Below, piece by piece: positions 1 through 15,567 of a stretch of DNA of 64,000 nt. A program made the translations under genes and the position numbers. Positions within the stretch are counted from its first letter, which is position 1; every line of letters starts with the position of its first letter. Source of the DNA: Selaginella moellendorffii. Lineage: Eukaryota > Plantae > Lycopodiophyta. The notes beneath the pieces were generated by a model. It searched no databases. It saw nothing but the letters and a program-made list of their open reading frames with translations, and was not told where the DNA came from. The DNA lies in the NCBI RefSeq assembly GCF_000143415.4, contig NW_003314339.1:613751-677750 (forward strand), read 5' to 3'.

Positions 1-512
1 CACCTGCAAAGTACAAAGTGAATGATTTGGTGTTAGTCCGTTTTCCCTATTTTACAGTACATGGTTTATCTAAGGGGCTCCTTGCGCAATGGAAAGGACC
101 GTATCGGGTGTTGCGGCAAGTTAGACCGCAAGTTTATAAGGTTCAGCATGACGTCCAGCAAGCCGATCCTCTGGAGATTGTGCATGTGCAGCGGTTGAAA
201 CGCTTCATACAAAGAGATCAGGAGCAGTTAATACCGTCTACAGATCCGCCGATGCCTCCTCCTAACGTTCCTCCAGATCCCGGCCCATCTACAAGAGAAC
301 CCTGACGGCCTTCCTTTATTCCAAGAGGAAGGGATGATATGAGGGCCAAGTGTACGGCTATGATGTCGTATACTAATATTAGCGTAGTGGGATTTTGGTA
401 GCCGTCGGATTGGTTTCAATCCGGACCACTCGCTCCTGTATATAAGCTAGGGTTTTTGGGTTAATTGATATTCACATTTCTGTATTCCCTTTCCATATTC
501 CATGCACTCACA
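1..512 (+). mobile_element. 3' end of a Ty3/gypsy LTR retrotransposon (integrase C-terminus, PPT, 3' LTR 338-512)
   Basis: ORF 18-305 has the integrase GPY/F motif (WKGPYRV...VHVQRLKRF). A purine tract (aagaggaaggga) lies at ~323-334. A 175-bp repeat ending ...CACTCACA is also found at 556-731. Confidence 0.9.
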
Positions 513-555
513 TCTTTAATTTTTAATATATAAAATACATTTCAAAATTACTATG

Positions 556-3500
556 TGTGAGGTCCAAGTGTACAGCTACAATGTCGTATACTAATATTAA
601 CATAGTTAAATTTTGTTAGTTGTCAGATTGATTTCAATTCAGACCACTCACTTTTGTATATAAACTAGGGTTTTTGGGCTAATTGATATGCACATTTTCT
701 GTATTCTCTTTCCATATTCCATGCACTCACATTGGTGGAGTTGAAGGCAACTTTCATTATCCTGAAGGAGTGCTAGAATTTGGGATTTTTTGTTTAGATC
801 TCCCTTTTTTTTAGTTTTTCTCACCTTATTGTTTTTGTTTGTTTCTTTTTATTCATCTTCATGGCAGAGTAGTAGCCTCCTCCTCTGACCCTAGAGCAGC
901 AGTTGGTTGCAGTTAAACAATTAAACTCAGTTGATGGTAACATTCACGGCATATGGTACAACTCTTTCTGCTCTTATTGCCAATTCTTGCATCCAGCCAG
1001 AGTTCTTTTGTAGGAATCCTAGGGGTGATGTGTACTATTGGTTCTATCACTTTACGATGATTATCACATATCATTCTTAGGATGATGCTTGACATTTACA
1101 TGAGTTTCCTATATGTCTCCAAAGGATGGCACTGCAATGGGACAATGGTTTGGGCGCAGCCACATGTGAGGATTGGAGTAATCTCTTAGATGTCTTCAAA
1201 CGTGTATTTGGATATGCTGATAATGCCTTTCAACAATTGCATCATCTTCGTCAAGGGTCATTTGAGTCGATGATGCAATTTAGTGTTTGTTTCCAAAGCC
1301 TTTTACTTCCTGTGGAGCCAAATATATTGGAGTGGATCAAGCTAGAAATATTGTGGCCAACACTTCGTCAAGATCTTGTAAGACTTGTGCATGCACTTAC
1401 TCTAGCCACCTTTAACGATGCCGTTCACTTGGCATAACGTTATAAAATGTCACCTCTTTCACTTCTTGTTGCACATCCTTTAGCTCCACTTCCTATGAGA
1501 GATGGTTTAGTTCCAATGGAGGTTGATGCTATTGCTATCCAGGTTCAAGGATAAGGGTGAGGATATGGTCGTGGCTATGATGTCCATTGCTAGGACTGTG
1601 ATGAAGTTAGTCACAATTATCGGCGTTATTAGTGTTTTCTAAATTGGCGACTTTTATTTCCTAGATGGAGACTTTGACATCAACAATGTCTTATTAGTGC
1701 TACTATGGAAGATCTGGAAACCGAGATGCATTCAAGAAATGAGGAGTCACACAAGTAGTAGAGGGACCTTGTGTGAATAAGTTAGTGACCCCTCTATATT
1801 TCTCTCGAGATTATCATCAAGGGGTTCACTCAGCATTAGTTCATCCAACATTTACTTTCTAAGCTGTTTTTATAATAAAAGATTTCCTATTATTTTCTTT
1901 GTATTGATTGATATAGGTTTGAGTTTATTTTCAATTGCTCAACCTATTGCCACATATTGCCATCTATATTTGCATCATATAGTAGAGCCAATTTTCATTT
2001 TTTATGGCAACGGGCGTACACATGCATGTGTATGAAATGAGGTAGACCTAATTGTTCATGTGGGCAATTTTGAGCTTGAGTTACAAACATTGTAGGTGGT
2101 GCTGAGTCAAGATTTTGACCTCATCTTTGGTATAAAGTGGTTGTGGCATAATTATGCCAAGTGTGACTTTAAGGCTTCTCACCCTTATCTCATACTTCCA
2201 TATATTTCTTCCATTCCTCTCACTTTTGTACTTCTTTATCCCTCTACTTCTACCTTTACTTCCATCACCTTTGTCACCTTATTATTTCTTCCTATGTTTC
2301 CATCTTGTTCCTCTCTTCCCTTTTCTAATCTCTCTAACAATCTTTGTATTGCAGTGGTTAACTGACTTATGAAGGAGTATATTAATCTTTTTGAATTTGA
2401 CCTGTCATCTGGGGCCAAAATTGCCACACATCATCCTATTCCAATTGGGGATGCTTGTCCAATCAAGGTTTTAGTTCGTCACCGATTACCCAAAGAGATC
2501 AAGATTTTATATACAGACATCAAAGAGATGTTGGAAAAGGGTGTTATTCAAAAGTTGTGGAGTCCTTATGCATTTGAATTTTATTTTATGACGAAACTTG
2601 ATGGGAGTATTCATTTTTGCATCTATTATCATCCGTTAAATGAAATGACAATCCCAGATATATACCCTATTCCTCACACTACTAATCTCTCGGATTGTCT
2701 AGGGAGAAGTCATTGCTTCACTAAATTAGATCTTGCTTTTAGGTACTGGCAAGTATCAATGGTTGAAGAAGATATCCTTAAAACAGTTTTTTATACACTG
2801 TTTGGTTTGTACAAGTTCTTGGTGATGCCGTTTGGTTTGAATAATGCTTTAGCAACTTTTTAGCTGTTCTTTCCACTATGCCGGAGGTGACTACTAACTT
2901 CATCAATGATGTCTTGATCTATTTAGAAGGGACATAAAAGGAACACGTCCGTGATGTTCATAAAGTATTAGATCGGCTACAAGAAGTTGGTTTTAAGTTG
3001 AAGTGGTTAAAGTGTGTATTTGGGTCTAAGGATATGACTTATCTTGGGTACTGTATTTCCTGTAAGGGTTTGCAAGTTGATCCTGACAAACTTGTGGCTA
3101 TTCTAAAGTACCCTACTCTAAAGTGTATGAATGATATATAATGCTTTCTAGGCAAGATGCAGTATCTTGATCATTTTGTTGATTCTCTTTTTTATCGCAC
3201 TACACTATTGCAAGCATTGCTGAAGTCATCAAAGTCATTTTTCATCTGATCTGCAAACTATGAGTAGGTGTTTACAGATTTAAAAGAACTATTAATAACT
3301 CTTCCAATTTTGGCATATCCTAACTACACTTAACATTTCATTTTGTGTGTGGATGTTTCTGATATTGGTTTTGGAGATGTGTTAATGCAAAAGAGTCTAA
3401 GTGTGCTTGGTCAGTGCCATTCTATTATATATATCAGTTGTACATTAGAACCAGCAGAGGTGAACTACTTCACGACAGAGAAGGAGTATTTAGCAACAGT

Positions 3501-5155
3501 TTGGGCTTTCAAGAAACTTCATACATATCTACATAATTCTTGAATGTTACTAGAATGTGATAATGCTGCAGTTACTTCATTATTGAAGAAGAAGAACTTG
3601 ATTGGTCACTGTTCAGTGGGCTTTGAAATTTTAGATATATGATTTTGATATTTTTTATTACCCGGGGAGTTCTATGGCTAATGTTAATACCCTTTTTTAA
3701 TCTCCTTTGCCTTTTTCACTCTCTTCTCATGTTTTTAATGAGCTTATTGTTCCAGCATTTATAGATTTTTTAAATGAAGATTTTGTGGCATTGGTGGTTG
3801 TTGTATTTGATGTTCAGTATCCACAAGGTGCAAAACAAGATTTACTTTCTCTTGACGAGGTTTGCGAGGCTTAAAAGATTGAGCTTGGATTCGAAAGATT
3901 TGCACTGGGTTTAAGAATTTTACATCACTTACTAATGACTTGCTATTTCGGCATTTACATTCTCAATATCACCTTGGGGACGGTCTTCTTTCTCTTATAG
4001 AGATGGATCTTAATAATCATTTATGGCTGATGGTGCTTTCAATCTTTATTTCATATTTTCTCTATGCCTACCATGATTCTCTTGTCTTAAATGGGCATAT
4101 GGGACATCATTGTGTGATTGAAATGTTATATAGATCTTTTTATTAGCCAGAGATATAGAAGTGTTATCCAATATGTGAATAATTACTTTTGGTGCTAAGC
4201 TCATAATACTTTCTTTTGTACTGCGGAAAATTAATTGTAATTTCCGTCCATTTGAGTTGGTGGCATTTGATTTGATGGGACTGTTTCCATAATCAACTAC
4301 TAGCAATGAATATATAGTTATGGATATGCCACAATTTCACGAGTGTTTATCATCCACAATCAGACAGTTTAGTGGAACGATTTGTTTGGACCTTCAAAGT
4401 GATGATTGCAAAGTATATGAACTTCTAGCATTCGGATTAGGATAGTTATTTGCCATCTTTTTGGTATGCATATGTCACAAGGGTATAAAGTTTTGTTAGT
4501 GCTTTATCATATAAACTTTTATATGGTCATGATTTAATATTGCCAATGGAGTTAAGTTTACCTTCACAATTGCCGTAGACTACTAATGCTAAGTTGTGGG
4601 ATCAGTATTTGATAAGCATTCTTCCACTTATCCAAGCAGAATCTGCTGAAAACCTGAGCCATGTACAAGTGGCACAACAATGACATTATAACTCTCATCA
4701 TCATCCACCTACGGAGTACAAAGTGGATGATTTAATATTGGTCTATTTTCCCTATCTTACGGTATATGGTTTATTTAAGGGGCTCTTTGCTCAGTGGAAA
4801 GGATTATATCGAGTGTTATAACAAGTTGAACCACAAGTTTATGAAGTTTAGTATGACATCTAGCAAGCCGATCTTCCAGAAATTGTGCATATGTAGCGGC
4901 TGAAATGCTTCATATAAAAGGACCAGGAACAGCTAGCACCACTTACAAATTCACTGACTTTTATTACTCTAGATCCCAGCCCATCCATCAAAGAACCCTA
5001 ATGATCTTCCATCATTCCGAAAGGAAGGGATATTGTACAATTATAATGCTGTATATTAATATTAGTGTAGTGGGATTTTGGTAGATGTCGGATTAGTTTC
5101 AATTTGGACCATTTTCTTTTATATATAAGTTAGGGTTTTTGGGCTAATTGATACA
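556..5155 (+). mobile_element. Degenerate full-length Ty3/gypsy LTR retrotransposon (~4.6 kb)
   Basis: 5' LTR 556-731 (TG...CA) is followed by PBS-like TGGTGGAG. Gag-like ORF 1126-1437; RT (FTKLDL...YWQV, KFLVMPFGLNNALATF) 2369-2863; RNase H (DVSDIGFGDVL...TTEKEYLATVWAF) 3343-3543; integrase remnants ~4050-5000, paralogous at their 3' end to 1-320. PPT ~5020-5030 and a partial 3' LTR ~5035-5155. Many stops and frameshifts. Confidence 0.9.
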
Positions 5156-5789
5156 TATTTGCAAAGTATAATTATAATATAAAAAAATTATTGATAAAAT
5201 ATATTAATTATTAAAAAACTCTTAATATATAGTATTGGAAATGAAAGTTTAAAAGTATTAACTTATGTTATAACTATTAATGGTGAAGCATTAAGTTAGT
5301 TAGATATTTACAATTTTTTTGTAGCTAATTGATTAATTAAGTATCAATAGTATAAATGGTTATTGTCCCCATGAACTAAACATATTCAGCATCTAATAAT
5401 TAATTACTATACTAAATTAAATATCTATTTAAAATTGTAAGAGTTGTGCTAGCATAATGAGATCATAGCTAAAAAGCTTATGATGTGGTGCTCATAGATT
5501 TTTATGAGTTTTAAATATTAATTTTATTTATTTTTATTTAAATTTAATTTAATATTATATAAGGATACAATAATTTCACTCATGGATTTATTGAAAAAAT
5601 GTGATATATTACATACTATATATAATACACAGTTATTAGTGTTTATGTGTTTTTTATTTCAGTAATATATAATAAATAGATTTTTATTTTTTGTTGTACA
5701 TAGTTTATGTTTTTTTGAAGCATAAAAGCTACTTTTAAGTCTCTAAATAAATATTATTTTTAAGTTTATTTATCCTATAGAGCTTGAGC

Positions 5790-6250
5790 TTGTTCCAGAT
5801 CGACTTTGCATACAAGTAACATTTGGACTATGCTCTTTGTATAAAATCTAGTTGGTGAATTAAAGCAGTGTTTTAACCTGTTACATCTTTTTCCAATTTA
5901 TACAACTCTTCACCTGCACCAAAGTTGCCCAAGAGCTGGTAATTTTCTTGAGAGTAATACAAATCATCAGAAGAGCAAAAGTGAGGAGGGGAGGGGGGTG
6001 GTGGGAGTGAGAAGACAAAAAGAAACTTTTTTGCAAACTTTTTTGCAGTCTCATACTTCTTGTTGGGCACTGCAAGACTGCCAAAACAGAATATAGATAG
6101 ATAAATAGATACTCCCTCTCCCAATTCTACCATAGCACCTCTATAGTTCTACTTCTTTTCTTTTAGCTTTGATAAAAAGCTTTATTGGTTGAGAAGATGT
6201 TAGAGTCCAACCGAAGATTGCAGCAAAGCATGAAGAGTTCACTGAGATTC
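5790..6250 (-). pseudogene. Degenerate partial copy of the DUF309 gene at 27518-28262
   Basis: The reverse complement matches ~27770-28260 (MVELGEGVS, SQENYQLLGNFGAGEELYKLEKDV), including part of the intron. The middle (~5975-6110) is replaced by unrelated sequence. Confidence 0.85.
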
Positions 6251-6806
6251 AGGCAAAGGTATTTAGTATTTAGTTAAATTATGTGACAGGGCACTTGAAG
6301 CGGATCACTGAGCGTATTGATTCCTGAGGTTGTTTTGGCTTAAGTTTGGAGATTTTCTACTGACCTGTGTGCACAGGGCAGCTCAGTTGTAGTTGGTACA
6401 CCACATCACTTCTATGACTTCTACGTTCTTCGAGGGAGCGCTCTACACAGACGAGAGGTTCAAGCGAAAGCCATCTCGCGGCGGTGATTCAACCCCGCGC
6501 ATTGTGTTCACGTTGAATGGCGAGATGACCTGCCAGGCAGACTGCTCCAGAGCAGAGGAATAGCCCTCTTTATGCGGCGTGCGATCGTGAATCTCGCCTT
6601 CGAATTCCTGCTTGAGAACGCGAGGAGGACGGACGATCCTGGAAATCACAGCCCCTACCCCGATCGAGGCGCGAATCGAGTGGCGTGGCGAATTGTTTAG
6701 CCAGATCGTGCTCGAATTAGAAAGAAATTCGAATATTCGCAACGCGCCATGGATGCCTGACCGTCCGATTTTTCTAGAAACCGGCGCGAGCTAGAGCTTA
6801 GCGGCC

Positions 6807-8000
6807 ATGGATCTTGGCCAGTCTCCACACCGGCGTCAGATGGGATCTCTCGTAGATCTCTTCAACGAGCACGACGGGCGTCGTCCATTTTCACATCTCT
6901 CAGCCTCTTTCATCATCGATGTTTCAATTGATCTTGTCCAAGGTCTGGAACTACAAGACGAGAAGGTGCATGTTCACAGGAGTATCCCTGGATCGTAAGT
7001 GCTAGCGACGATCAAGCCATCAGGATTTGGAACTAGCAGTCCCGGACGTGCTGACGGGACACAATCACTACGGCTTCGTTTCACGTCAAGGACGATCTCA
7101 TGGTGTTTGCGTCGCTGAGACGGTCTCTCCAGCCGAGGATCTTCACAGAATTCTGAAACTCACGCAGATGAACAGCTAACGTTTTGGTGGCGACGATGCG
7201 GTGGTCAAGTATGTTCTCGAGGGGCATGACAGGGCTGCTTTCCATCCAAGCTTGCCGCTAGTTGTCTCTGGTGCTGACGATCGACAAGTAAAGCTGTGGA
7301 GGATAAATGTTAATATGTGGACTTGTTCTTTTGTTCTAGTTTCTAAACGCTTGCATTGGTTCCAGAAACAGGCTTGGGAGGTTGGTCACATCAACAACGT
7401 TTCCTGTGTCATGTTCCACACTGCCGGGACATCAAACTCGAGTCTGGGACTTGTCCAAGCGTTCTGCCGTACAAACTTTCAGGAGGGACCCGAGATGAAC
7501 TTTTTTGCGACAGGACAGGGCAGTGGAATTATCGTCTTCAAGCTCGAAAGAGAGAGGCCGGCTTATACAATCAGTGCGGGGGTGCTGTATTACGTCAAAG
7601 AAAAGGCTTTGAGGACTTACGACTTTGCCACTTCAGAGGACACATCACTGATAAACATTCGAAGAGCGGAGCTGAATCAGAGAACATTGTCTTGCAATCC
7701 AGCGGAGAACGCCGTGCTTTTATGCTCGGACCGTCACAACGGTACGTACAAATCCCGAGAAGTAATGACACTTCGGCCGAAGAAAGCCAGCGGGTCGTGG
7801 GGTGTTTCGTGCCCCGCAACCGCTTTGCCAAGGCGCACGGCTTGATTCTAGTCAAGAATCTGAGGAACGACGTCTCCAAGAGAGTCGAGGCTCCATTGGC
7901 GACAGTTGACGCCATCTTCTATGCGGGGACGGGATCTTAGAGCCTTCGACAGTGCAATGCGCCTTCTCACTCGGCAACTCGGGATCAAAAACTTCGGGTC
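6807..8000 (+). pseudogene. COPA: Coatomer alpha subunit (alpha-COP) pseudogene: WD40 N-terminal part plus a short C-terminal-region piece
   Basis: MGSLVDLFNEHDG; VVKYVLEGHDR..AAFHPSLPLVVSGADDRQVKLWR; GIIVFKLERERPAY; VDAIFYAGTG; then AFDSAMRLLTRQLGIKNF at ~7944-7998. Many deletions and frameshifts. Confidence 0.88.
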
Positions 8001-8989
8001 TTCACCCGCCAAACAAATATCACAAATATCCTCGAGACACTGTGAATAATCACAAAAATCTTCGCAGATCGAAGCACCGTGATCGGGAGAATTTTATTCT
8101 TTCTTTGTGCTTTCACTCTTATTTAATTTTAGCTATGGAATGAATATTGTTTCAAGGAGAAATGGGCTTCTAACGCCCAGAATCTGAAATGAAAAGCGAT
8201 TCTTGAAACTCTGCTGCGCGAGTTGTCCAATGCGCATTTCTTCGAAGTTTTCAAGGGGAAAATAGCGATTCCAATTTTCCTGCGATTATCAAGTAAAGAC
8301 GAGGAAGCTAGGAAGCTAAGAATTTACAAGCGAGAGCGATTATCAGTAGCCTAGAAAAGAAGAGAAATCTCAAGTTCTATTCCAACATAGGAAAGAATTC
8401 ACAGGTAGAAGCAGTAGAGAAACCTCACATCACGCTGCCTTGGCTGCCTTGGCTCCTACTTCTGCTCGCCAACAGCAGCAGCCAGAAACAACGGTGGCAG
8501 ATAATACATTTTTTTCATCATCATACCTCTTGTGCTTGTGCTCCCAGCCAGAGCTGGTCCGCTGATTTTCTTTGAATGAAAGCTACAAAATCTCTACCTC
8601 CACGTACCTTACGGCGGGCCTACCTTACGGACCATAAAATCTTTTCTTTACGTGCGGGAGAAAAGCTAAAGGAAACCAGCGCACTGAGAAAGAAAAACCA
8701 GGCAGAAAAGGAAACCAGCGACAGCACTGAGAAAGCAAAACCAGGGAGAAAAAGAAACGAGCGAGAGTACTGAGAAAGCAAAACCAGGGAGAGAAGAGAG
8801 GGGCTGGGGCTGGGGCTTTTAGATGACGAAGAGTGAAAACTACCATGGCTCCAGCGTGTGTCGTCTTGTGTGAGATGGGAGACAACGAGAATTCGCGTGT
8901 GCTGCGTCACGAGGGAGGAATTAATCCGGGCCGACATTATAGCCAAGGAGTTTTGAATTTGATCGTTCCAAAGCAGCTCAGATCTTAGT

Positions 8990-9340
8990 CAACGATGTCA
9001 ATTTAAGAATATTTTCAAAGAAATGGCAATCGCTACCGCCAGGATCTCGTCTCTTCCACTGCTGGGGCTCATCGGAGACTCAGCAAGGATTTGGCAGATG
9101 ATCTCTTGGAGAACTGCGACAGTGTCCCGGAGACTAAACTTGCCGAAAGCGGGAATCTGGACCGATGCCAGGAACTGTCTCCGAAGATGCCGCAGCGTGG
9201 CATTGTGTTTTAAAAATTGATAATGCAATGTATGAAATGCGTCTCGAAACCAGAAGATGTTTCTGGAAAGATTCCAAAGAAAGATAGACACTCGCGGTGG
9301 CTTCTGCATATGCCCATTCGCGCTACCTTGTTTGAATCTT
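8990..9340 (+). pseudogene. Possible PLS-class PPR gene remnant
   Basis: Broken-frame peptides LAESGNLDRCQELSPKMPQRGIV, KIPKKDRHS and AVASAYAHSRYL resemble PPR motif consensus. Confidence 0.4.
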
Positions 9341-9354
9341 TGGTGATGGTAGAA

Positions 9355-9660
9355 TCCACGAACTTTGGGAATGGCGCACAATCCCCCGCTTAATGACCAG
9401 CACACAGCATCCACCACCGCCAAGTCACAAACGCTGAAAATCTGCCCGGCCACCTCCGGCACGAACCGCACAGCGCAGCAGGGGCACGACACCGCCCGCG
9501 TAGATGGGCGTAAACGTTGCTCCCCACACCACAAACGGGTTCCTCTCCGTCGTTCTCGCACGCCTGGAGGACCTGCTTCGAATTGGCGATCCCGGCCTGG
9601 TTTGGATTCATGTCTCGCAATCGCCTCGCCAGGAGACAACGAGAATTGGAGTGTGCAGGG
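9355..9660 (-). pseudogene. COPA: Alpha-COP C-terminal fragment, inverted relative to 6807-8000
   Basis: Across frames: ARRLRDMNPNQAGIANSKQVLQACE, RNPFVVWGATFTPIYAG, VSCPCCAVRFVPEVAGQIFSVCDLAVV...GLCAIPKVR. These match the alpha-COP C-terminus (RNPFVVCGATYVPIY..VSCPYC.ARFVP...C.VCDLAVIG). Confidence 0.8.
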
Positions 9661-9783
9661 GGAATTAAAGCAAAATGAAGTTGTAAATATTCCAAGGAAC
9701 CTTCAAAAAGACGGAGATCCTATCTTTTAGAATTCTAAGTATCCGCTGGGTTTACCCATGCATCTGAATTGGCAGCAGCTTCA

Positions 9784-10903
9784 ATGGCGCTAGTGCCTTG
9801 TTCGTCGTTCAATCCTCGCGGGCTCCTTTCTCTCCCGCCATTGCGCAAATCCCTGAGAAGGCCGAAGTCGAAAGCGATTGTATTGGGTGTGTCAATGTCG
9901 GAGGATGGGCAATCTCGTACTTGCAAGAAGTAAGATGCAACAAAGAAGAAGAAAGCAGAGCGCACAACATATTTGTTCGCTGCTGTTGCCTCAAGCACAT
10001 TGATTGGCGGTCTCAGCATTGGAGCTGCGTGTTACAGATTCTTGTGGCAAATGCAGGAGGTCTGTGAACTTTGACACACATAGGCTTGATCACAAGAGAG
10101 AAATCTTTAACTATGTTCAGAAAGGCAGCAGTGAATTGCCTGCTCTGGAAATCCTTGGTACCGTGTCTTTGGCATTAGGTGCAGCTGTGAGTATGTTCAA
10201 AGCTGCTGTTCAAGATTGATTTTATTCTGTTTCTCAGGTGGGCATGGAGTTTTGGGCTAGATGGGCACACAAAGCGCTATGGCACTCTTGCTTGTGGAGC
10301 ATGCACAAGGTAAGGCACAAACAAATTTTCGGACAGTTAAATTGCCACGAGTCTCTCTACAACAGTCTCATCATGTTCCTCGGCAAGGTCCATTCGAGGT
10401 CAACGATGTTTTTGCCATTGTGAACGCAGTCCCGGCGATAGCTCTCATGTCTTACGGATTCTCCCACCAAGGACTCCTTCCTGGCCTGTGCTTTGGAACA
10501 GTAAGTAATAGAAGCATTTCTTGTAGCTTTGAAAATATTGCATATCAGGGCCTGGGCATCACCATCTTCGGGATGGCCTACATGTTTGTTCACGACGGCC
10601 TGGTGCACCAACGGTTTTCAGTTGGCCCACTGGCCGATGTGCCATATTTTCGGAAGGTAGCTGCTGCTCACCAGGTTTGTCCATAAATCATTCAGCTCTA
10701 GATTTACCATCAAACCTTTCACTCAGATTCACCATGCCAATCTGTTTGATGGCGTTCCGTACGGTTTGTTCCTGGGGCTAAAGGTGAGCGAGAGACTGGA
10801 AACCAAACTTTTGACGGATTCATGGCCCTGATAGGAGCTGGAAGCGGTTGGTGGAGAATTGGAGCTGAAGAAGCTGGTGTCAAATCGTCATCATAAAAAA
10901 TAA
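9784..10903 (+). CDS. BCH: Non-heme di-iron beta-carotene hydroxylase (BCH/CHY-b), multi-exon; possible in-frame stop in exon 1
   Basis: AERTTYLFAAVASS; VGMEFWARWAHKALWH..HKSHH; GPFEVNDVFAIVNAVPAIAL; MAYMFVHDGLVHQRF; AAAHQIHH; GVPYGLFLG.KELEAVGG. GT-AG introns. TAA at 9931-9933 is in frame with ATG 9784. Confidence 0.9.
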
Positions 10904-11313
10904 TAGATTGTAGCACCACGAAAAAGATTTTTTTTATTATTACTTTATAGAAAAAGCGACTGCAAATCGGCCCTATGTGTTAAAGCTGACACCAGGTCTT
11001 CAAACTATCGTACATAGAAAACGTGCGTTTTTCTAAGAACATGGAATCCTGGCGGGTGGGCTGCATAATGAAATGGCCCACAACCCAATGTCATACCGAG
11101 AAAAAGACTCTGTCCTAGCAAGGTTTGTACGCAGCTCGGACCAAACCACGGACTTTGTACCAGGAGGAAGGAAGAGCATTGTCCCACGCCCCGCGCACGT
11201 CCATCTCGGGTCGGTCCCTTGTTTGTGAGGAGGCTTTCTAAAACGTATCGCTGCAAGGCGGTCGCTTGCAACTTGAATGAAAAGGGTAGCTGCGGCTTGA
11301 AGGGGACAAGAAG

Positions 11314-12653
11314 ATGTTTGCCAGTACCACGACTCCACATCGGCTTGTTCGAAGAGTGGCAACAACCAGTACTGGGCCGAATGTGAAGAGCAGGAAGCTG
11401 CTATGCGGGAAGAAGAGCGAGAAGATGATTGCCAGTACCACGGCTCCGCCCCCGCTTGTCCGAAGTGTGAAGAATGTAACAACGACAAGTACCGGACCGG
11501 GATTCAAAGTCAATGCATTGGGCTTGCTCCTGGGGACGTGTTTGCTCTTGCACCCAGCAAACCATGCTGGAGCTCTGGACATCGAGACTGCTCAAAAAAC
11601 ATGGAAATGTCTTCTGGGTGGATGCAGGTGCTGTTGTGTTCCCCTCCTCATTTGCTGGGTTCCACTGTTTATTTTGAATCCACCTGATCTCATAGTTGTG
11701 CATGTTCTTCAGATCCGAGCTGGTTCGATGCGTGAGAGATCCTTCATGCGCTGCCAATTTAGTTTGTCTGGAAACTTGCAGCCCAGGAGACTTGAATTGC
11801 CAGGTATTATTTGATTTAAAGTTGTTCTCTCATTTTGTATCGGAACATAGGTCAGATGCGGAGACATTTTCCAGAACAAGGTCGTAGAGGAATTCAACAC
11901 ATGCCTCCTGAGCAAAAAAAAGTGCATCCCTCAAAGTGCCAACGACGGCTCCTACCCGGTACCTCCAGACTGCGCTTTGGTGGAAAAGTTCAACACCCAA
12001 GACTTCACAGGCACATGGTATATTACCAGCGGTCTTAACCCCCTGTTCGATCTCTACGATTGCCAAGTCCATGAGTTCTCGGCCAGTCCCCACAAGCTCA
12101 CCGGAAAACTGACGTGGAGGGTGACCACCCCCGACGGCGGTTTCATCACACGCAACGCGATGCAAAATTTCGTGCAGAAGAATCCCAAACGCCCGGGTGT
12201 GCTGTCCAATCATGACAACGAGTACCTCAATTACAAAGACGATTGGTGAGTGTTTCGCAAGCTTCCAAAGCTTCGGTGTGTGTAGGTCCGGTGCGCGATT
12301 GCCAGCATAGCTGCGAATCCTATATGAAAAATTGACGGATTGATTGGTGCAGGTTCATCGTCTCCGCCCGGCTCAACAACCAACCGGATGACTACGTGTT
12401 CGTGTACTACAATGGGTCCAACGATGCATGGGACGGCTATGGTGGGGCCGTCGTCTACACACGAAGTTCAAGCCTCCCCAAGTCCAATTTCCCAGAGCTG
12501 CGGCTTGCTGCTGCTAAAGTCGGCTTGGATTTTGACAACTTCAAAATGACTGACAACAGTTGCGGTCCGCAGCCATCTTTGTTTGCTAGAGTCCACAAGA
12601 GATTGTTTGAAGGAGAGAGAGCTCTTGCTACAAACCGTAATAGTTCTAGCTAG
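11314..12653 (+). CDS. VDE: Violaxanthin de-epoxidase-like lipocalin (4 exons), lacking the Glu-rich C-terminal domain
   Basis: Cys-rich N-domain ([29 protein letters not shown]...[20 protein letters not shown]). Lipocalin core ([23 protein letters not shown]; [13 protein letters not shown]; [25 protein letters not shown]; TDNSCGP). Lumen-type signal ending in AGA. Confidence 0.92.
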
Positions 12654-14681
12654 TCATTTATCCTCTGTGTTTTTATAAAGATATGAGAACAAAATGTAGC
12701 TATGTATGCACTTGCTACCCTAGATCAGACATAAGCTCCAGGGAAAATTTTCTTGGAACTGAAAAAAAGCAAGCAAATGTATAACATATCTCTCTACTTT
12801 AGTAAGAACTTCTACGATCAATCGCACTGGCTGGCCATGGAGACTTTTGATATTTTGCCAGGAATTAAATCTCAAATTTCTACTCATAATATTTGAACCC
12901 AAGAGCCATATATATAAATGGGCATCCAGTAACTCATCCTAGATTAGTTTAAGGTTGAACTATATTAGTTTCTAAAGAAGTGTTCAATTAATTTCTATTG
13001 TCTTTATTAAGTTTTTCATAATTTTCTAATATTCATTTAATTGAATATCATGACCAAAATAGCATTATATAATGGATATTTTGAGAGGCTAACATTTAAA
13101 TATTTACAAATAATTGATATTTGACATATATAAGTATATATTTAATATGTATTAACTTCATACTGGCCATAATTCACAAAAAAATGGAGAGTGTTGCATT
13201 GAAGAATGCTTAGAGTTGTTATAAGCAAGCTTGGCAGAAGGAAGAAAAATAACCTAATCATCCTGTTGGTGAGAAATAAAATATTAAAAATACTACTCAA
13301 GAGTTTAAATAAGACATTTCAATTACCTATCAATTTAAGGATGATAAGAAGCTAACACTTATTTTGATATAAAGGAATTAAAGAAACTATTGTTAAATGG
13401 TGGAAAATAATTAAAGACCACAATCAATGATAATATTATATAGCAATCCATAAAGATGAAAAATCTCCTTTTAGATAAGTTTAATTGACTACTTTCCATA
13501 TATTATCTTCTGATAGGGCAAGAAATGTGCTATTTTGAAAAATCAATCAATTGTAATATTCAAGAACAATGTTAAAGACTTAAATGGTGGAAGATTGATG
13601 AGGAAATCAATAAAAATAAATTTCTAAAGCTCTGGAGTAAGAGGAATTTTAAAGAAGACTAGATAAAAAATGTGAAGGCATCTTGATTCATTAATACACA
13701 TAGCAAGTATAGATAAAATTTTCAATATACTTTTGCATATGAAACACTCATAACAATTTCTTGGTTCTAAGTAAAAGATTGGTATGTTAACCAAATTTGA
13801 TGGCATGTAATTTAAGTTAAATTTATTGATATTTCATTCCAACTTCTTATATAGAATTGATTGGATTAATTTTTTATTAGGATATTGTAAGTAATTAAAT
13901 TTTCCATTCCACTTTAATCACTTAACCATGCCTTATATCACTTAGAAGAATTTCACTCACAACTTCCATATATCCTCATTCTAACTTGGGGCACAAGAGG
14001 TGATATCAAAGTCATGCTAACTTTACATTTTATCTAAGTGCTCTACATATCTAGTTTTACTTTAGACACTTAAAGGTGCTAATGAAGTACCAGCCATTTA
14101 TTTATGATTATTATCATTGGCATTAGATGCAAAAGTTTGAGTGAATTGCTTTAGCAAATAAAACCTTGCAAAAATGAAAGCACATGATACAAACATAGTA
14201 ATTCTAGGATATTAAAAAATATATATAAAAACTCCTGCACTAAAACTATATTTATCTTTATTGATAGTCTAAAACCATATATACCATGGTTTTGTTTTTC
14301 CAAAATTAAATAATCTATCCATGAGTGGTAATTTTATGACTACATCTTAGCATCTTTAAGATGCCCCAAAACATAAAGAAATACCATCCTTTACTATCTT
14401 TGTTTTTATTCAAGTCTCTCTTTTGTATACATTAATTCTTGCTAAAACCATCATTAGGTTAGGGCCTAAAAACCTATCTACTAAATTTCATTAACTTTTG
14501 AAACTTCTTTACCATGTGACTATACCTTTGATTATTAAACAAAAGGATTGTTCCTCTTTCTTTTTATAATTAAGGATTTTAAAATGACATTTTAAAACAT
14601 TACAACCCAATATAAACATTATAAGTACTTTCCCCACCTTTCACCACTAGGGTGCCTTAACCCTATGGCTAGAGCAAGGTG

Positions 14682-15567
14682 TGAGACACAAAATCCCTAG
14701 TCCTCAAAGTGGAGCTGGAAGGGTGCCACGCGGTAGTGGCCGAAGTGAAAGCCAAATAAGCGTAACACATTTGGATTAAAAACTTTGACTTAAAAGGTCG
14801 AGAGCAGGAGTGGAACTTCCAATGAAGTGCTCAAAGAATAAGCACGGAGCAACAATAAGTGAGTCTCTAGAAAAGCGACTCGAGAAGGAGGACCCGAGAT
14901 GGAGTCTGAGATGGACCTGAGAGGGACCTGAGATGGAGTCCGAGATGGAGTCCGAGATGGAGTTTGAGATAGAGTTCGAGATGGACCCAAGATAGAGTCT
15001 GAGATGGAGTCCGAGATGGAGTCCGAGATGGAATTCGAGATGGACCCAAGATGGAATCTGAAATGGAGTCTAAGATGGAGTCCGAGATGGAGTTTGAGCT
15101 CGAGTCTGAATCCCAAGGACAGAAAGGGACTTGGTGGGGACCGGAACGGAGATATTGGGGAAGGTTATTCCCCATGTTTGTGGGCATCCTAAAGATGCTA
15201 AGGAGTGGATCTGGGATGACTACTCATGGACAAATGGCCCAGTCTTGGAGAGACAGGATTGCAATGCAAATGATGTTAGACCACCGATGTGACTAAGGTG
15301 AATGAGCGTGGCTTAACGTAACAGGCTCATATGTCAATGGTACCTTGGGGTGTTGGTCATGGGATCAGACACGTGGAGCATTTGGACCAAGTGCAAAAGT
15401 TGAGTGGTATAGATGCCATTCTCGGGGCTAACAAGCCCCAAGTCCTAAATGGGACTTATGGAGGTTGTGAATGAGATTCTGACCACTTGGAAGAATCTCA
15501 TTCACAACCTCCATAAGTCCCATTTAGGACTTGGGAGGTTGTGAATGAGATTCTTCCAAGTGGTCAG
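14682..15567 (+). mobile_element. Younger, internally deleted LTR-like copy nested antisense in the older element
   Basis: Starts TGAGACAC and is GC-richer than its flanks. Possible 5-bp TSD AGGTG at 14677-14681 and 15568-15572. Confidence 0.5.
14893..15098. repeat. 12-bp minisatellite (GAGATGGAGTCC)n, ~17 degenerate units
   Basis: Directly visible. Produces spurious EMES/SISD repeat ORFs. Confidence 0.9.

What the first reader, a model, noticed from the sequence alone, without database searches (positions are those of the whole stretch)
9784..12653. Two-gene xanthophyll mini-cluster: beta-carotene hydroxylase directly upstream of a violaxanthin de-epoxidase
Seen: BCH and VDE lie on the same strand ~410 bp apart, isolated as an island between pseudogene debris and LTR debris. 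Established: these non-homologous enzymes both produce zeaxanthin (BCH from beta-carotene, VDE from violaxanthin), and plant carotenoid genes are generally not clustered. Some Selaginella accumulate the retro-carotenoid rhodoxanthin, and honeysuckle rhodoxanthin synthase is a BCH variant. Inference: divergent paralogues may be co-located as a specialised carotenoid or photoprotection module rather than being the housekeeping copies.
Basis: partly seen in the sequence, partly recalled or inferred. Interest (0 to 1): 0.75.

Follow-up and report, generated by a model that had tools for sequence, protein, structure and literature searches.

The report
Carotene hydroxylase beside tail-less VDE, duplicated
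In the spikemoss Selaginella moellendorffii this is one of four duplicated loci where an extra, diverged carotene hydroxylase gene sits in front of an extra violaxanthin de-epoxidase gene that lacks its acidic tail; in this copy the hydroxylase carries a premature stop, so the pair looks like a duplicated neighbourhood and not a working two-gene pigment module.

Summary
A BCH gene (9784-10903) and a VDE gene (11314-12653) lie on the + strand, 410 nt apart. The window is S. moellendorffii GL377643.1.

1. The BCH has an in-frame TAA at 9931-9933 (codon 50 of 266). Its allele and both copies of a paralogous locus have CAA there.
2. The VDE (XP_002987036.2, 366 aa) keeps the 10 cysteines, the lipocalin domain, D177 and Y198. 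It lacks about 67 residues of the Glu-rich tail.
3. The pair is present in seven fetched sequences from four loci. Ordinary BCH and VDE genes lie elsewhere and are not adjacent.

VDE is intact and tail-less in 7 of 7 copies. BCH is intact in 3, has the stop codon here, and is decayed in 3. dN/dS is 0.15-0.35 for both genes.

The three residues that determine rhodoxanthin synthesis are the ordinary BCH type (A, F, A).

Verdict: these are lineage-specific extra copies, adjacent through one event and then copied together. The tail-less VDE is selected, the BCH is dispensable, and nothing supports new pigment chemistry.

The scan already reported this pair on three other pieces of this genome. New here is the null BCH allele.

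The parts
9784..10059 (+). BCH exon 1 (92 codons: transit peptide and first membrane helix)
   Evidence: Translation. The same exon is an open 92-codon reading frame in L006, L005 and L007.
9931..9933 (+). In-frame TAA (codon 50) that disables this BCH copy; the other intact copies have CAA (Gln)
   Evidence: Alignment of seven copies; polarised as derived in the window; translations.
10121..10903 (+). BCH exons 2-7: 10121-10186, 10238-10309, 10366-10500, 10549-10674, 10727-10783, 10835-10903 (stop TAA 10901-10903). All four histidine boxes and all GT-AG splice sites are intact.
   Evidence: Intron positions are the same as in canonical Sm BCH. The annotated 212-aa product 9946-10903 carries PF04116.
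10904..11313 (+). 410-nt spacer between BCH stop and VDE start, shared by all copies of the pair
   Evidence: The upstream reading frame that NCBI models use in locus B is closed by stops here.
11314..11627 (+). VDE exon 1: presequence with a two-unit tandem repeat, a hydrophobic stretch, an A-G-A motif, and the start of the Cys-rich domain
   Evidence: Repeat number is 1, 2 or 3 units in different copies.
11713..11803 (+). VDE exon 2 (Cys-rich domain)
   Evidence: PF07137 match; exon map.
11851..12245 (+). VDE exon 3 (end of Cys-rich domain and most of the lipocalin barrel; D98, D114, D117, Q119, R138, Q153, F155, H168, D177)
   Evidence: PF07137 E 1e-50; alignment to 3CQN.
12353..12653 (+). 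VDE exon 4 (W179, Y198, D206, end of lipocalin domain). It stops at TAG 12651-12653, only about 31 residues after the domain, so there is no Glu-rich tail.
   Evidence: No tail remnant lies downstream in any copy.
7201..7842 (+). Coatomer-alpha WD40 pseudogene fragment in the upstream flank, shared with L006 and L008
8998..9636 (-). Weak coatomer-alpha C-terminal fragment on the opposite strand
   Evidence: E 8e-4, below the Pfam cut-off.

Best explanation
The window holds one haplotype of locus A, one of four S. moellendorffii loci carrying the same gene pair. The pair is a diverged paralogue of the non-haem di-iron beta-carotene 3-hydroxylase, followed 410 nt later by a paralogue of violaxanthin de-epoxidase without the Glu-rich C-terminal domain. 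Both arose by DNA-level duplication of the ordinary genes, because intron positions are identical. Both then changed quickly, became neighbours once, and were later copied together by segmental duplication. The tail-less VDE is the part that selection keeps. It is probably a lumenal, ascorbate-dependent de-epoxidase with all catalytic residues. Its mature form is much less acidic (pI about 6.0-6.5 against 4.9-5.3), so its pH-dependent membrane binding or oligomerisation probably differs from ordinary VDE (inferred). The BCH partner looks like an ordinary hydroxylase by its histidine boxes and specificity residues, but it is dispensable. In this window it is a young null allele (Q50 to stop). 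Shown: gene structures, the stop codon, tail loss, copy number, selection signals. Inferred: enzyme activities, lumen targeting, altered pH behaviour.
For: Identity of the window and gene models. Stop codon TAA against CAA in L006, L005 and L007. On the window branch BCH has 1 synonymous and 6 non-synonymous changes, including A183T at a column invariant in 108 canonical BCHs; VDE has 4 and 1. BCH is decayed in L001, L009 and L008, while VDE is open and tail-less in all seven copies. dN/dS is 0.20-0.34 for BCH (p 5e-5) and 0.15-0.35 for VDE (p 1e-6). VDE exons are better conserved than VDE introns. Intron positions match the canonical genes. Canonical genes lie elsewhere. Catalytic and binding residues and the 10 Cys are kept: with PMC13181403. 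The tail is absent with no remnant. Charge figures. Partial C-terminal truncation of VDE keeps activity (Hieber 2002, as cited in PMC4412432). The trees show long stems, and a Selaginella-specific origin is not rejected (p-AU 0.51 and 0.50).
Against: No expression data could be examined here. Earlier scan notes say the copies are transcribed, but I did not test that. The TAA could be a sequencing error, or it could be removed by an unannotated in-frame 57- or 66-nt intron (GT at 9889 or 9880, AG at 9945), a normal size for this gene. The window-branch excess of non-synonymous changes rests on 7 events (Fisher p 0.07-0.09). Gene conversion between copies could distort dS. T112, an ascorbate contact in Arabidopsis VDE, is Leu here, and about 30 otherwise near-invariant VDE positions differ, so activity is not assured. 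A recent review calls the C-terminal domain essential (PMC13181403).
Confidence: 0.7

Rival explanations
1. A working two-gene zeaxanthin or photoprotection module. Both genes are functional here and co-regulated, kept adjacent by selection. The stop codon is an assembly error or is spliced out.
For: The two non-homologous enzymes both yield zeaxanthin. The pair and its spacer are retained together in four loci. Both genes show purifying selection between loci A and B. Both stems are about 3 times longer than the canonical Selaginella branches. A 57- or 66-nt in-frame GT-AG interval spans the TAA.
Against: BCH is destroyed in three other copies whose VDE stays intact. Homology between loci A and B starts only 22 nt before the BCH ATG, so no BCH promoter is shared. 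The same interval is coding in the intact copies. The window's BCH also carries a change at an invariant column.
Confidence: 0.12
2. Both genes are decaying relics. The tail-less VDE is an inactive truncation product, and the open reading frames survive only because the duplications are recent.
For: The tail is missing and many conserved positions have changed. Copies sit among transposon and pseudogene debris. BCH is already dead in most copies.
Against: The VDE reading frame is open in 7 of 7 copies, at dS up to 0.19, with dN/dS 0.15-0.35 (p 1e-6). Its exons are better conserved than its introns. The catalytic residues and all ten cysteines are intact.
Confidence: 0.1
3. New chemistry. Either the BCH is a rhodoxanthin-type multifunctional oxidase, or the VDE is a VDL-like tautomerase feeding an unusual xanthophyll.
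For: Thirteen near-invariant BCH positions are changed in all divergent copies, several next to the first histidine box. Algal VDL proteins also lack or have a poor Glu-rich tail (PMC13181403).
Against: The LHRS determinants are the ordinary A, F and A. VDL and VDR have Glu at position 177, and this protein keeps Asp. No report of rhodoxanthin in Selaginella was found in the library.
Confidence: 0.05

Closest known systems
Violaxanthin de-epoxidase (NPQ1; Arabidopsis lipocalin domain 3CQN/3CQR)
   Same: Same four-exon gene structure as the Selaginella canonical VDE. PF07137 match over the whole profile. The 10 conserved Cys are kept, as are D177, Y198, W179, D114, Q119, R138, D98, D117, H168 and D206. 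Clearly alignable to 3CQN (E 2.7e-36 and 5.2e-30).
   Different: About 67 residues of the Glu-rich C-terminal domain are absent. Residue changes include C7W, T112L, F116Y and Y180F. One residue is deleted in the NNRPDETEC motif. Mature pI is about 6.0-6.5 instead of about 5.
Algal VDE-like (VDL) and VDE-related (VDR) proteins
   Same: Cys-rich plus lipocalin architecture, with a reduced or absent acidic tail in VDL (PMC13181403).
   Different: VDL and VDR carry Glu at position 177, and this protein keeps Asp. In the trees it falls within land-plant VDE, and a position next to the Selaginella VDE is not rejected.
Plant beta-carotene 3-hydroxylase (BCH1/2, CrtR-b; PF04116 di-iron hydroxylase)
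   Same: Seven exons with the same intron positions as canonical Sm BCH. Four histidine boxes. A72, F102 and A103 as in ordinary BCH.
   Different: About 62% identity to the canonical Sm BCH. A 36-residue shorter first exon. Thirteen near-invariant positions changed (for example E to K in the HxxHH box, as in bacterial CrtZ by my recollection). A premature stop in this copy.
LHRS, honeysuckle rhodoxanthin synthase (PMC7176425)
   Same: Both are diverged BCH paralogues.
   Different: The defining residues T72, I102 and P103 are absent, and no pigment evidence exists.
Plant metabolic gene clusters
   Same: Two non-homologous enzymes of one pathway lie side by side.
   Different: Only two genes. 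One partner is repeatedly lost. No shared upstream region between loci. Co-expression untested.

Membership tests
Violaxanthin de-epoxidase (VDE) | VDE lipocalin domain (PF07137) | tested here: met
   P0155, which equals the window model: E 1.7e-97, profile positions 3-242 of 242; exon-wise.
Violaxanthin de-epoxidase (VDE) | Catalytic D177 and Y198, plus W179 | tested here: met
   Alignment to 3CQN. Residue roles from PMC13181403.
Violaxanthin de-epoxidase (VDE) | Ten conserved cysteines of the N-terminal domain (C9 to C72) | tested here: met
   All ten are present in the translation. Only the non-essential C7 is replaced by W (PMC4412432).
Violaxanthin de-epoxidase (VDE) | Glu-rich C-terminal domain of about 100 residues | tested here: not met
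   The stop comes about 31 residues after the lipocalin domain. Homology to the canonical tail ends at EGERAL, and no remnant lies downstream in 7 copies.
Violaxanthin de-epoxidase (VDE) | Bipartite presequence for the thylakoid lumen | tested here: inconclusive
   A Ser/Thr-rich N-terminus, a hydrophobic stretch and an A-G-A motif precede the mature start. No targeting predictor was available.
Violaxanthin de-epoxidase (VDE) | De-epoxidation of violaxanthin with ascorbate at low pH | not testable with these tools
   Needs an enzyme assay.
VDE-like (VDL/VDR) | Glu in place of D177 | tested here: not met
   Asp is retained (PMC13181403).
Beta-carotene 3-hydroxylase (BCH) | Fatty-acid-hydroxylase fold with four histidine boxes (HxxxxH, HxxHH, HxxxxH, HxxHH) | tested here: met
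   All four boxes are present in the script translation. PF04116 is recorded for the annotated product. Single-exon references alone do not reach the Pfam threshold.
Beta-carotene 3-hydroxylase (BCH) | Uninterrupted reading frame from the transit peptide to the stop | tested here: not met
   TAA at 9931-9933. The frame is intact in L006, L005 and L007.
Rhodoxanthin synthase (LHRS) | T72, I102 and P103 (mature numbering) | tested here: not met
   The window has A before the first His and F-A in NDVFAI (PMC7176425).
Plant metabolic gene cluster | Three or more non-homologous pathway enzymes, co-expressed | tested here: not met
   Only two enzyme genes are present. The neighbours are coatomer debris, an adenosine deaminase and an RCC1 gene. 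Co-expression is not testable here.

The most novel reading that the evidence does not exclude
The tail-less VDE is a naturally re-tuned de-epoxidase that binds thylakoid membranes, or is active, at a higher lumen pH than ordinary VDE. This would give this deep-shade plant a faster or constitutive zeaxanthin (or lutein-epoxide) response. The adjacent BCH copy, where still intact, would feed the same zeaxanthin pool under shared regulation.
Probability: 0.15. Interest if true: 0.6.

Novelty: new variant of a known kind. Interest (0 to 1): 0.3.

Why it matters
The role of the VDE C-terminal domain is listed as an open question in a 2026 review (PMC13181403). A land-plant VDE family that lost this domain, yet stayed under purifying selection in every copy, is a ready-made natural experiment on what the tail does for pH sensing, membrane binding and oligomerisation. 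It could inform attempts to tune non-photochemical quenching. For gene-cluster biology the result is cautionary. Two enzymes of one pathway can be adjacent at several loci simply because one adjacency was copied, while one partner decays. This window adds the youngest stage of that decay.

Tried and rejected
1. My first eight-exon BCH model spliced out the TAA with a 66-nt intron. I dropped it after the paralogue alignment showed the interval is coding in the intact copies.
2. Pfam on single BCH exons, and on a 103-aa read-through reference, gave no hit. NCBIfam gave nothing.
3. A word-based homologue search with the 141-aa ORF did not return the window's own BCH. A search with the canonical fragment listed only proteins at 80% identity or more. 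So I have no database id for the 266-aa BCH paralogues.
4. Exact look-ups of P0001 and P0505 found no record. The allele of locus D was therefore not fetched.
5. Rfam found nothing in 8-19 kb.
6. The 43-row careful VDE tree did not finish. Quick trees and AU tests on smaller sets were used instead.
7. I looked for remnants of the tail downstream of the stop and found none.
8. No paper in the library describes this pair or rhodoxanthin in Selaginella.
9. I considered a transposon-carried gene pair and did not pursue it. The duplication blocks differ in extent between loci and include ordinary flanking genes.
10. The joined BCH model was assembled only inside scripts from window.fa, for local alignment, dN/dS and trees. 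It was not sent to any database tool.

Full report
**What is there**

The window is Selaginella moellendorffii scaffold GL377643.1. Locus L002, fetched by exact protein look-up, is base-for-base identical to window 1314-22653.

Two intron-bearing genes lie on the + strand.
- The BCH gene runs from ATG 9784 to its stop at 10903. It has seven exons: 9784-10059, 10121-10186, 10238-10309, 10366-10500, 10549-10674, 10727-10783 and 10835-10903.
- The VDE gene runs from ATG 11314 to its stop at 12653. It has four exons: 11314-11627, 11713-11803, 11851-12245 and 12353-12653.
- The gap between them is 410 nt.

My spliced VDE model equals XP_002987036.2 (P0155, 366 aa). The annotation holds only a 212-aa partial BCH product starting at 9946, which carries PF04116.

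**The flanks**

Upstream are coatomer-alpha fragments on both strands (7201-7842 + and 8998-9636 -). Further upstream are remains of an LTR retrotransposon (integrase C-terminus, reverse transcriptase and repeats within 1-5200).

Downstream, 12.7-17.7 kb is AT-rich. It holds a 12-nt minisatellite and a perfect 44-nt hairpin but no recognisable retroelement protein. 'LTR debris' on that side is not shown.

Exon 1 reads through 49 codons and then hits TAA at 9931-9933. I fetched six other copies of the pair.
- L006 (GL377633.1) has the same flanking adenosine-deaminase and RCC1 genes. It is 98-99% identical in the genic parts, so it is the other haplotype.
- L005 and L007 are the two haplotypes of a second locus.
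- In all three, the codon is CAA and the gene is an open 266-codon frame.

Using the second locus to polarise changes, the window branch carries 1 synonymous and 6 non-synonymous BCH changes. These include the stop and A183T, at a column that is Ala in 108 of 108 canonical BCHs. The neighbouring VDE on the same branch carries 4 synonymous and 1 non-synonymous change. The numbers are small (Fisher p 0.07). They fit a recently disabled allele.

An in-frame GT...AG interval of 57 or 66 nt spans the stop, and that is a normal intron size for this gene. However, the same interval is coding in the intact copies and no model uses it. I treat rescue by splicing as a minor possibility.

**Second thing missed: the VDE has no acidic tail**

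PF07137 covers residues 98-335. The alignment to the Arabidopsis crystal-structure sequence (3CQN) shows these residues in place: D98, D114, D117, Q119, R138, Q153, F155, H168, D177, W179, Y198 and D206. T112 is Leu. Residue roles are from PMC13181403.

All ten conserved cysteines of the N-terminal domain are present. Only C7, which is absent from algal VDEs, is Trp.

The protein ends about 31 residues after the lipocalin domain. Compared with the Selaginella canonical VDE, about 67 residues are missing, and no trace of them lies downstream of the stop in any copy.

The mature tail-less proteins have a computed pI of 6.0-6.5 and are almost uncharged at pH 7. Ordinary VDEs have a pI of 4.9-5.3.

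**Third thing missed: these are extra copies, present four times**

The ordinary genes exist elsewhere.
- BCH XP_024515817.1 (302 aa) is 80-85% identical to seed-plant BCHs. It lies at GL377637.1:501-522 kb.
- VDE XP_002986185.2 (438 aa, with tail) lies at GL377637.1:829-850 kb.
- They are not adjacent.

The pair occurs at four loci.
- A: this window and L006.
- B: L005 and L007.
- C: L001 and L009, on the same scaffold as the canonical genes (L001) and on its haplotype partner (L009).
- D: L008, 176 kb from this window. A further fragment, EFJ13408.1 on GL377633.1, could not be fetched.

Intron positions in both genes match those of the canonical genes, so the copies arose at the DNA level and not by retroposition.

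The shared blocks differ in extent.
- A and B share window 9762-12847 plus parts of the deaminase and RCC1 genes.
- A and C share only 10059-12678.
- A and D share 5158-14152.

This is the pattern of segmental duplication. Homology between A and B begins only 22 nt before the BCH start codon, so the BCH copies do not share an upstream region.

**Selection**

VDE is open, correctly spliced and tail-less, with its stop in the same short region, in all seven sequences. BCH is intact in three, has the single stop here, and is riddled with deletions and lost exons in L001, L009 and L008.
- dN/dS is 0.20-0.34 for BCH between A and B (binomial p 5e-5 for L006 against L005).
- dN/dS is 0.15-0.35 for VDE across all loci (p 1e-6 for L006 against L001).
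- VDE exons are better conserved than VDE introns.

So the tail-less VDE is maintained everywhere. The BCH is maintained only at some loci.

**Origin**

In protein trees both divergent clades sit inside land plants on long stems. The VDE stem is 1.05 against 0.39 for the canonical Selaginella branch, and the BCH stem is 1.44 against 0.48. AU tests do not reject a sister position to the canonical Selaginella gene (p 0.51 and 0.50).

No protein between 60% and 88% identity to the tail-less VDE turned up among 5.8 billion clustered proteins. I cannot tell how well other Selaginella species are represented there.

A lineage-specific origin followed by fast change is the simplest reading. It is not proven.

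**Rhodoxanthin**

The honeysuckle enzyme owes its activity to T72, I102 and P103. Transferring these three residues converts a tomato BCH (PMC7176425). The corresponding residues here are A (before the first histidine), F and A (in NDVFAI), the ordinary type.

The VDE keeps Asp at position 177, where VDL and VDR have Glu. Nothing points to new chemistry.

The BCH clade does carry 13 changes at near-invariant positions. An altered property cannot be excluded.

**How it most likely works**

- Shown: structures, stop codon, tail loss, copy number, selection.
- Inferred: the VDE is imported into the lumen and de-epoxidises violaxanthin with ascorbate.

Partial C-terminal truncation of spinach VDE kept activity (Hieber 2002, as cited in PMC4412432). 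A 2026 review suggests the tail may keep VDE off the membrane at neutral pH (PMC13181403). A tail-less, less acidic VDE may therefore bind or act at a higher lumen pH. The BCH, where intact, is probably an ordinary hydroxylase. In this window it is probably a null allele.

**Relation to earlier scan notes**

The scan has already reported this pair on three other pieces of the genome (s1-385098, s1-420019, s1-398823). My independent analysis agrees with them on four loci, tail loss, the dead BCH at the locus next to the short-chain dehydrogenase, and no rhodoxanthin link.

New here:
- the premature stop in this haplotype's BCH;
- the count of seven fetched sequences;
- the polarised substitution counts;
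- the block boundaries.

Their statement that the genes are transcribed was not tested here.

**Method note**

Database searches used exons or open references only. The joined BCH model was built only inside scripts for local alignment, dN/dS and trees, and was not searched. The joined VDE model is identical to a database protein that was used by its id.

Noticed in passing
L003:4670-5359: A truncated second copy of the canonical VDE (residues about 40-207, 77-84% identical) lies 5 kb upstream of the canonical Selaginella VDE gene, next to the BURP-domain genes. It is a partial tandem duplicate.
   Followed up: partly
window 11314-11470; L005:10290-10560: The VDE presequence holds a tandem repeat of roughly 28-37 residues. 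Copy number varies between loci: one unit in locus C, two in A, D and L007, three in L005.
   Followed up: partly
window 15437-15535: A perfect 44-nt inverted repeat with an 11-nt loop sits in the AT-rich stretch downstream of the VDE gene.
   Followed up: no
window 14907-15119: A 12-nt minisatellite (GAGATGGAGTCC-like units). It gives rise to long spurious ORFs on the minus strand.
   Followed up: no
L005:10001-10290 and L007:10001-10290; window 11041-11313: NCBI models of the locus B VDE (492 and 465 aa) start 137-140 nt after the BCH stop, in a reading frame that is closed by stops in the window. This suggests a long VDE 5' leader that begins almost at the end of BCH, or an annotation artefact.
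   Followed up: partly
GL377637.1 (L001, L004, L003): Locus C of the pair, the canonical BCH and the canonical VDE all lie on one 0.98-Mb scaffold, at about 0.21, 0.50 and 0.83 Mb. The same holds for its haplotype partner GL377630.1. This hints that the pair arose by local duplication in that neighbourhood.
   Followed up: no
window 1-5200: Remains of a Ty3-type LTR retrotransposon: integrase C-terminal and SH3 domain at 18-302, reverse transcriptase at 2369-2860, and 140-nt repeats at 340, 558 and 5023.
   Followed up: partly
L004:14368-14451: A short BCH-like fragment (28 residues, 64% identical) lies 3 kb downstream of the canonical BCH gene.
   Followed up: no
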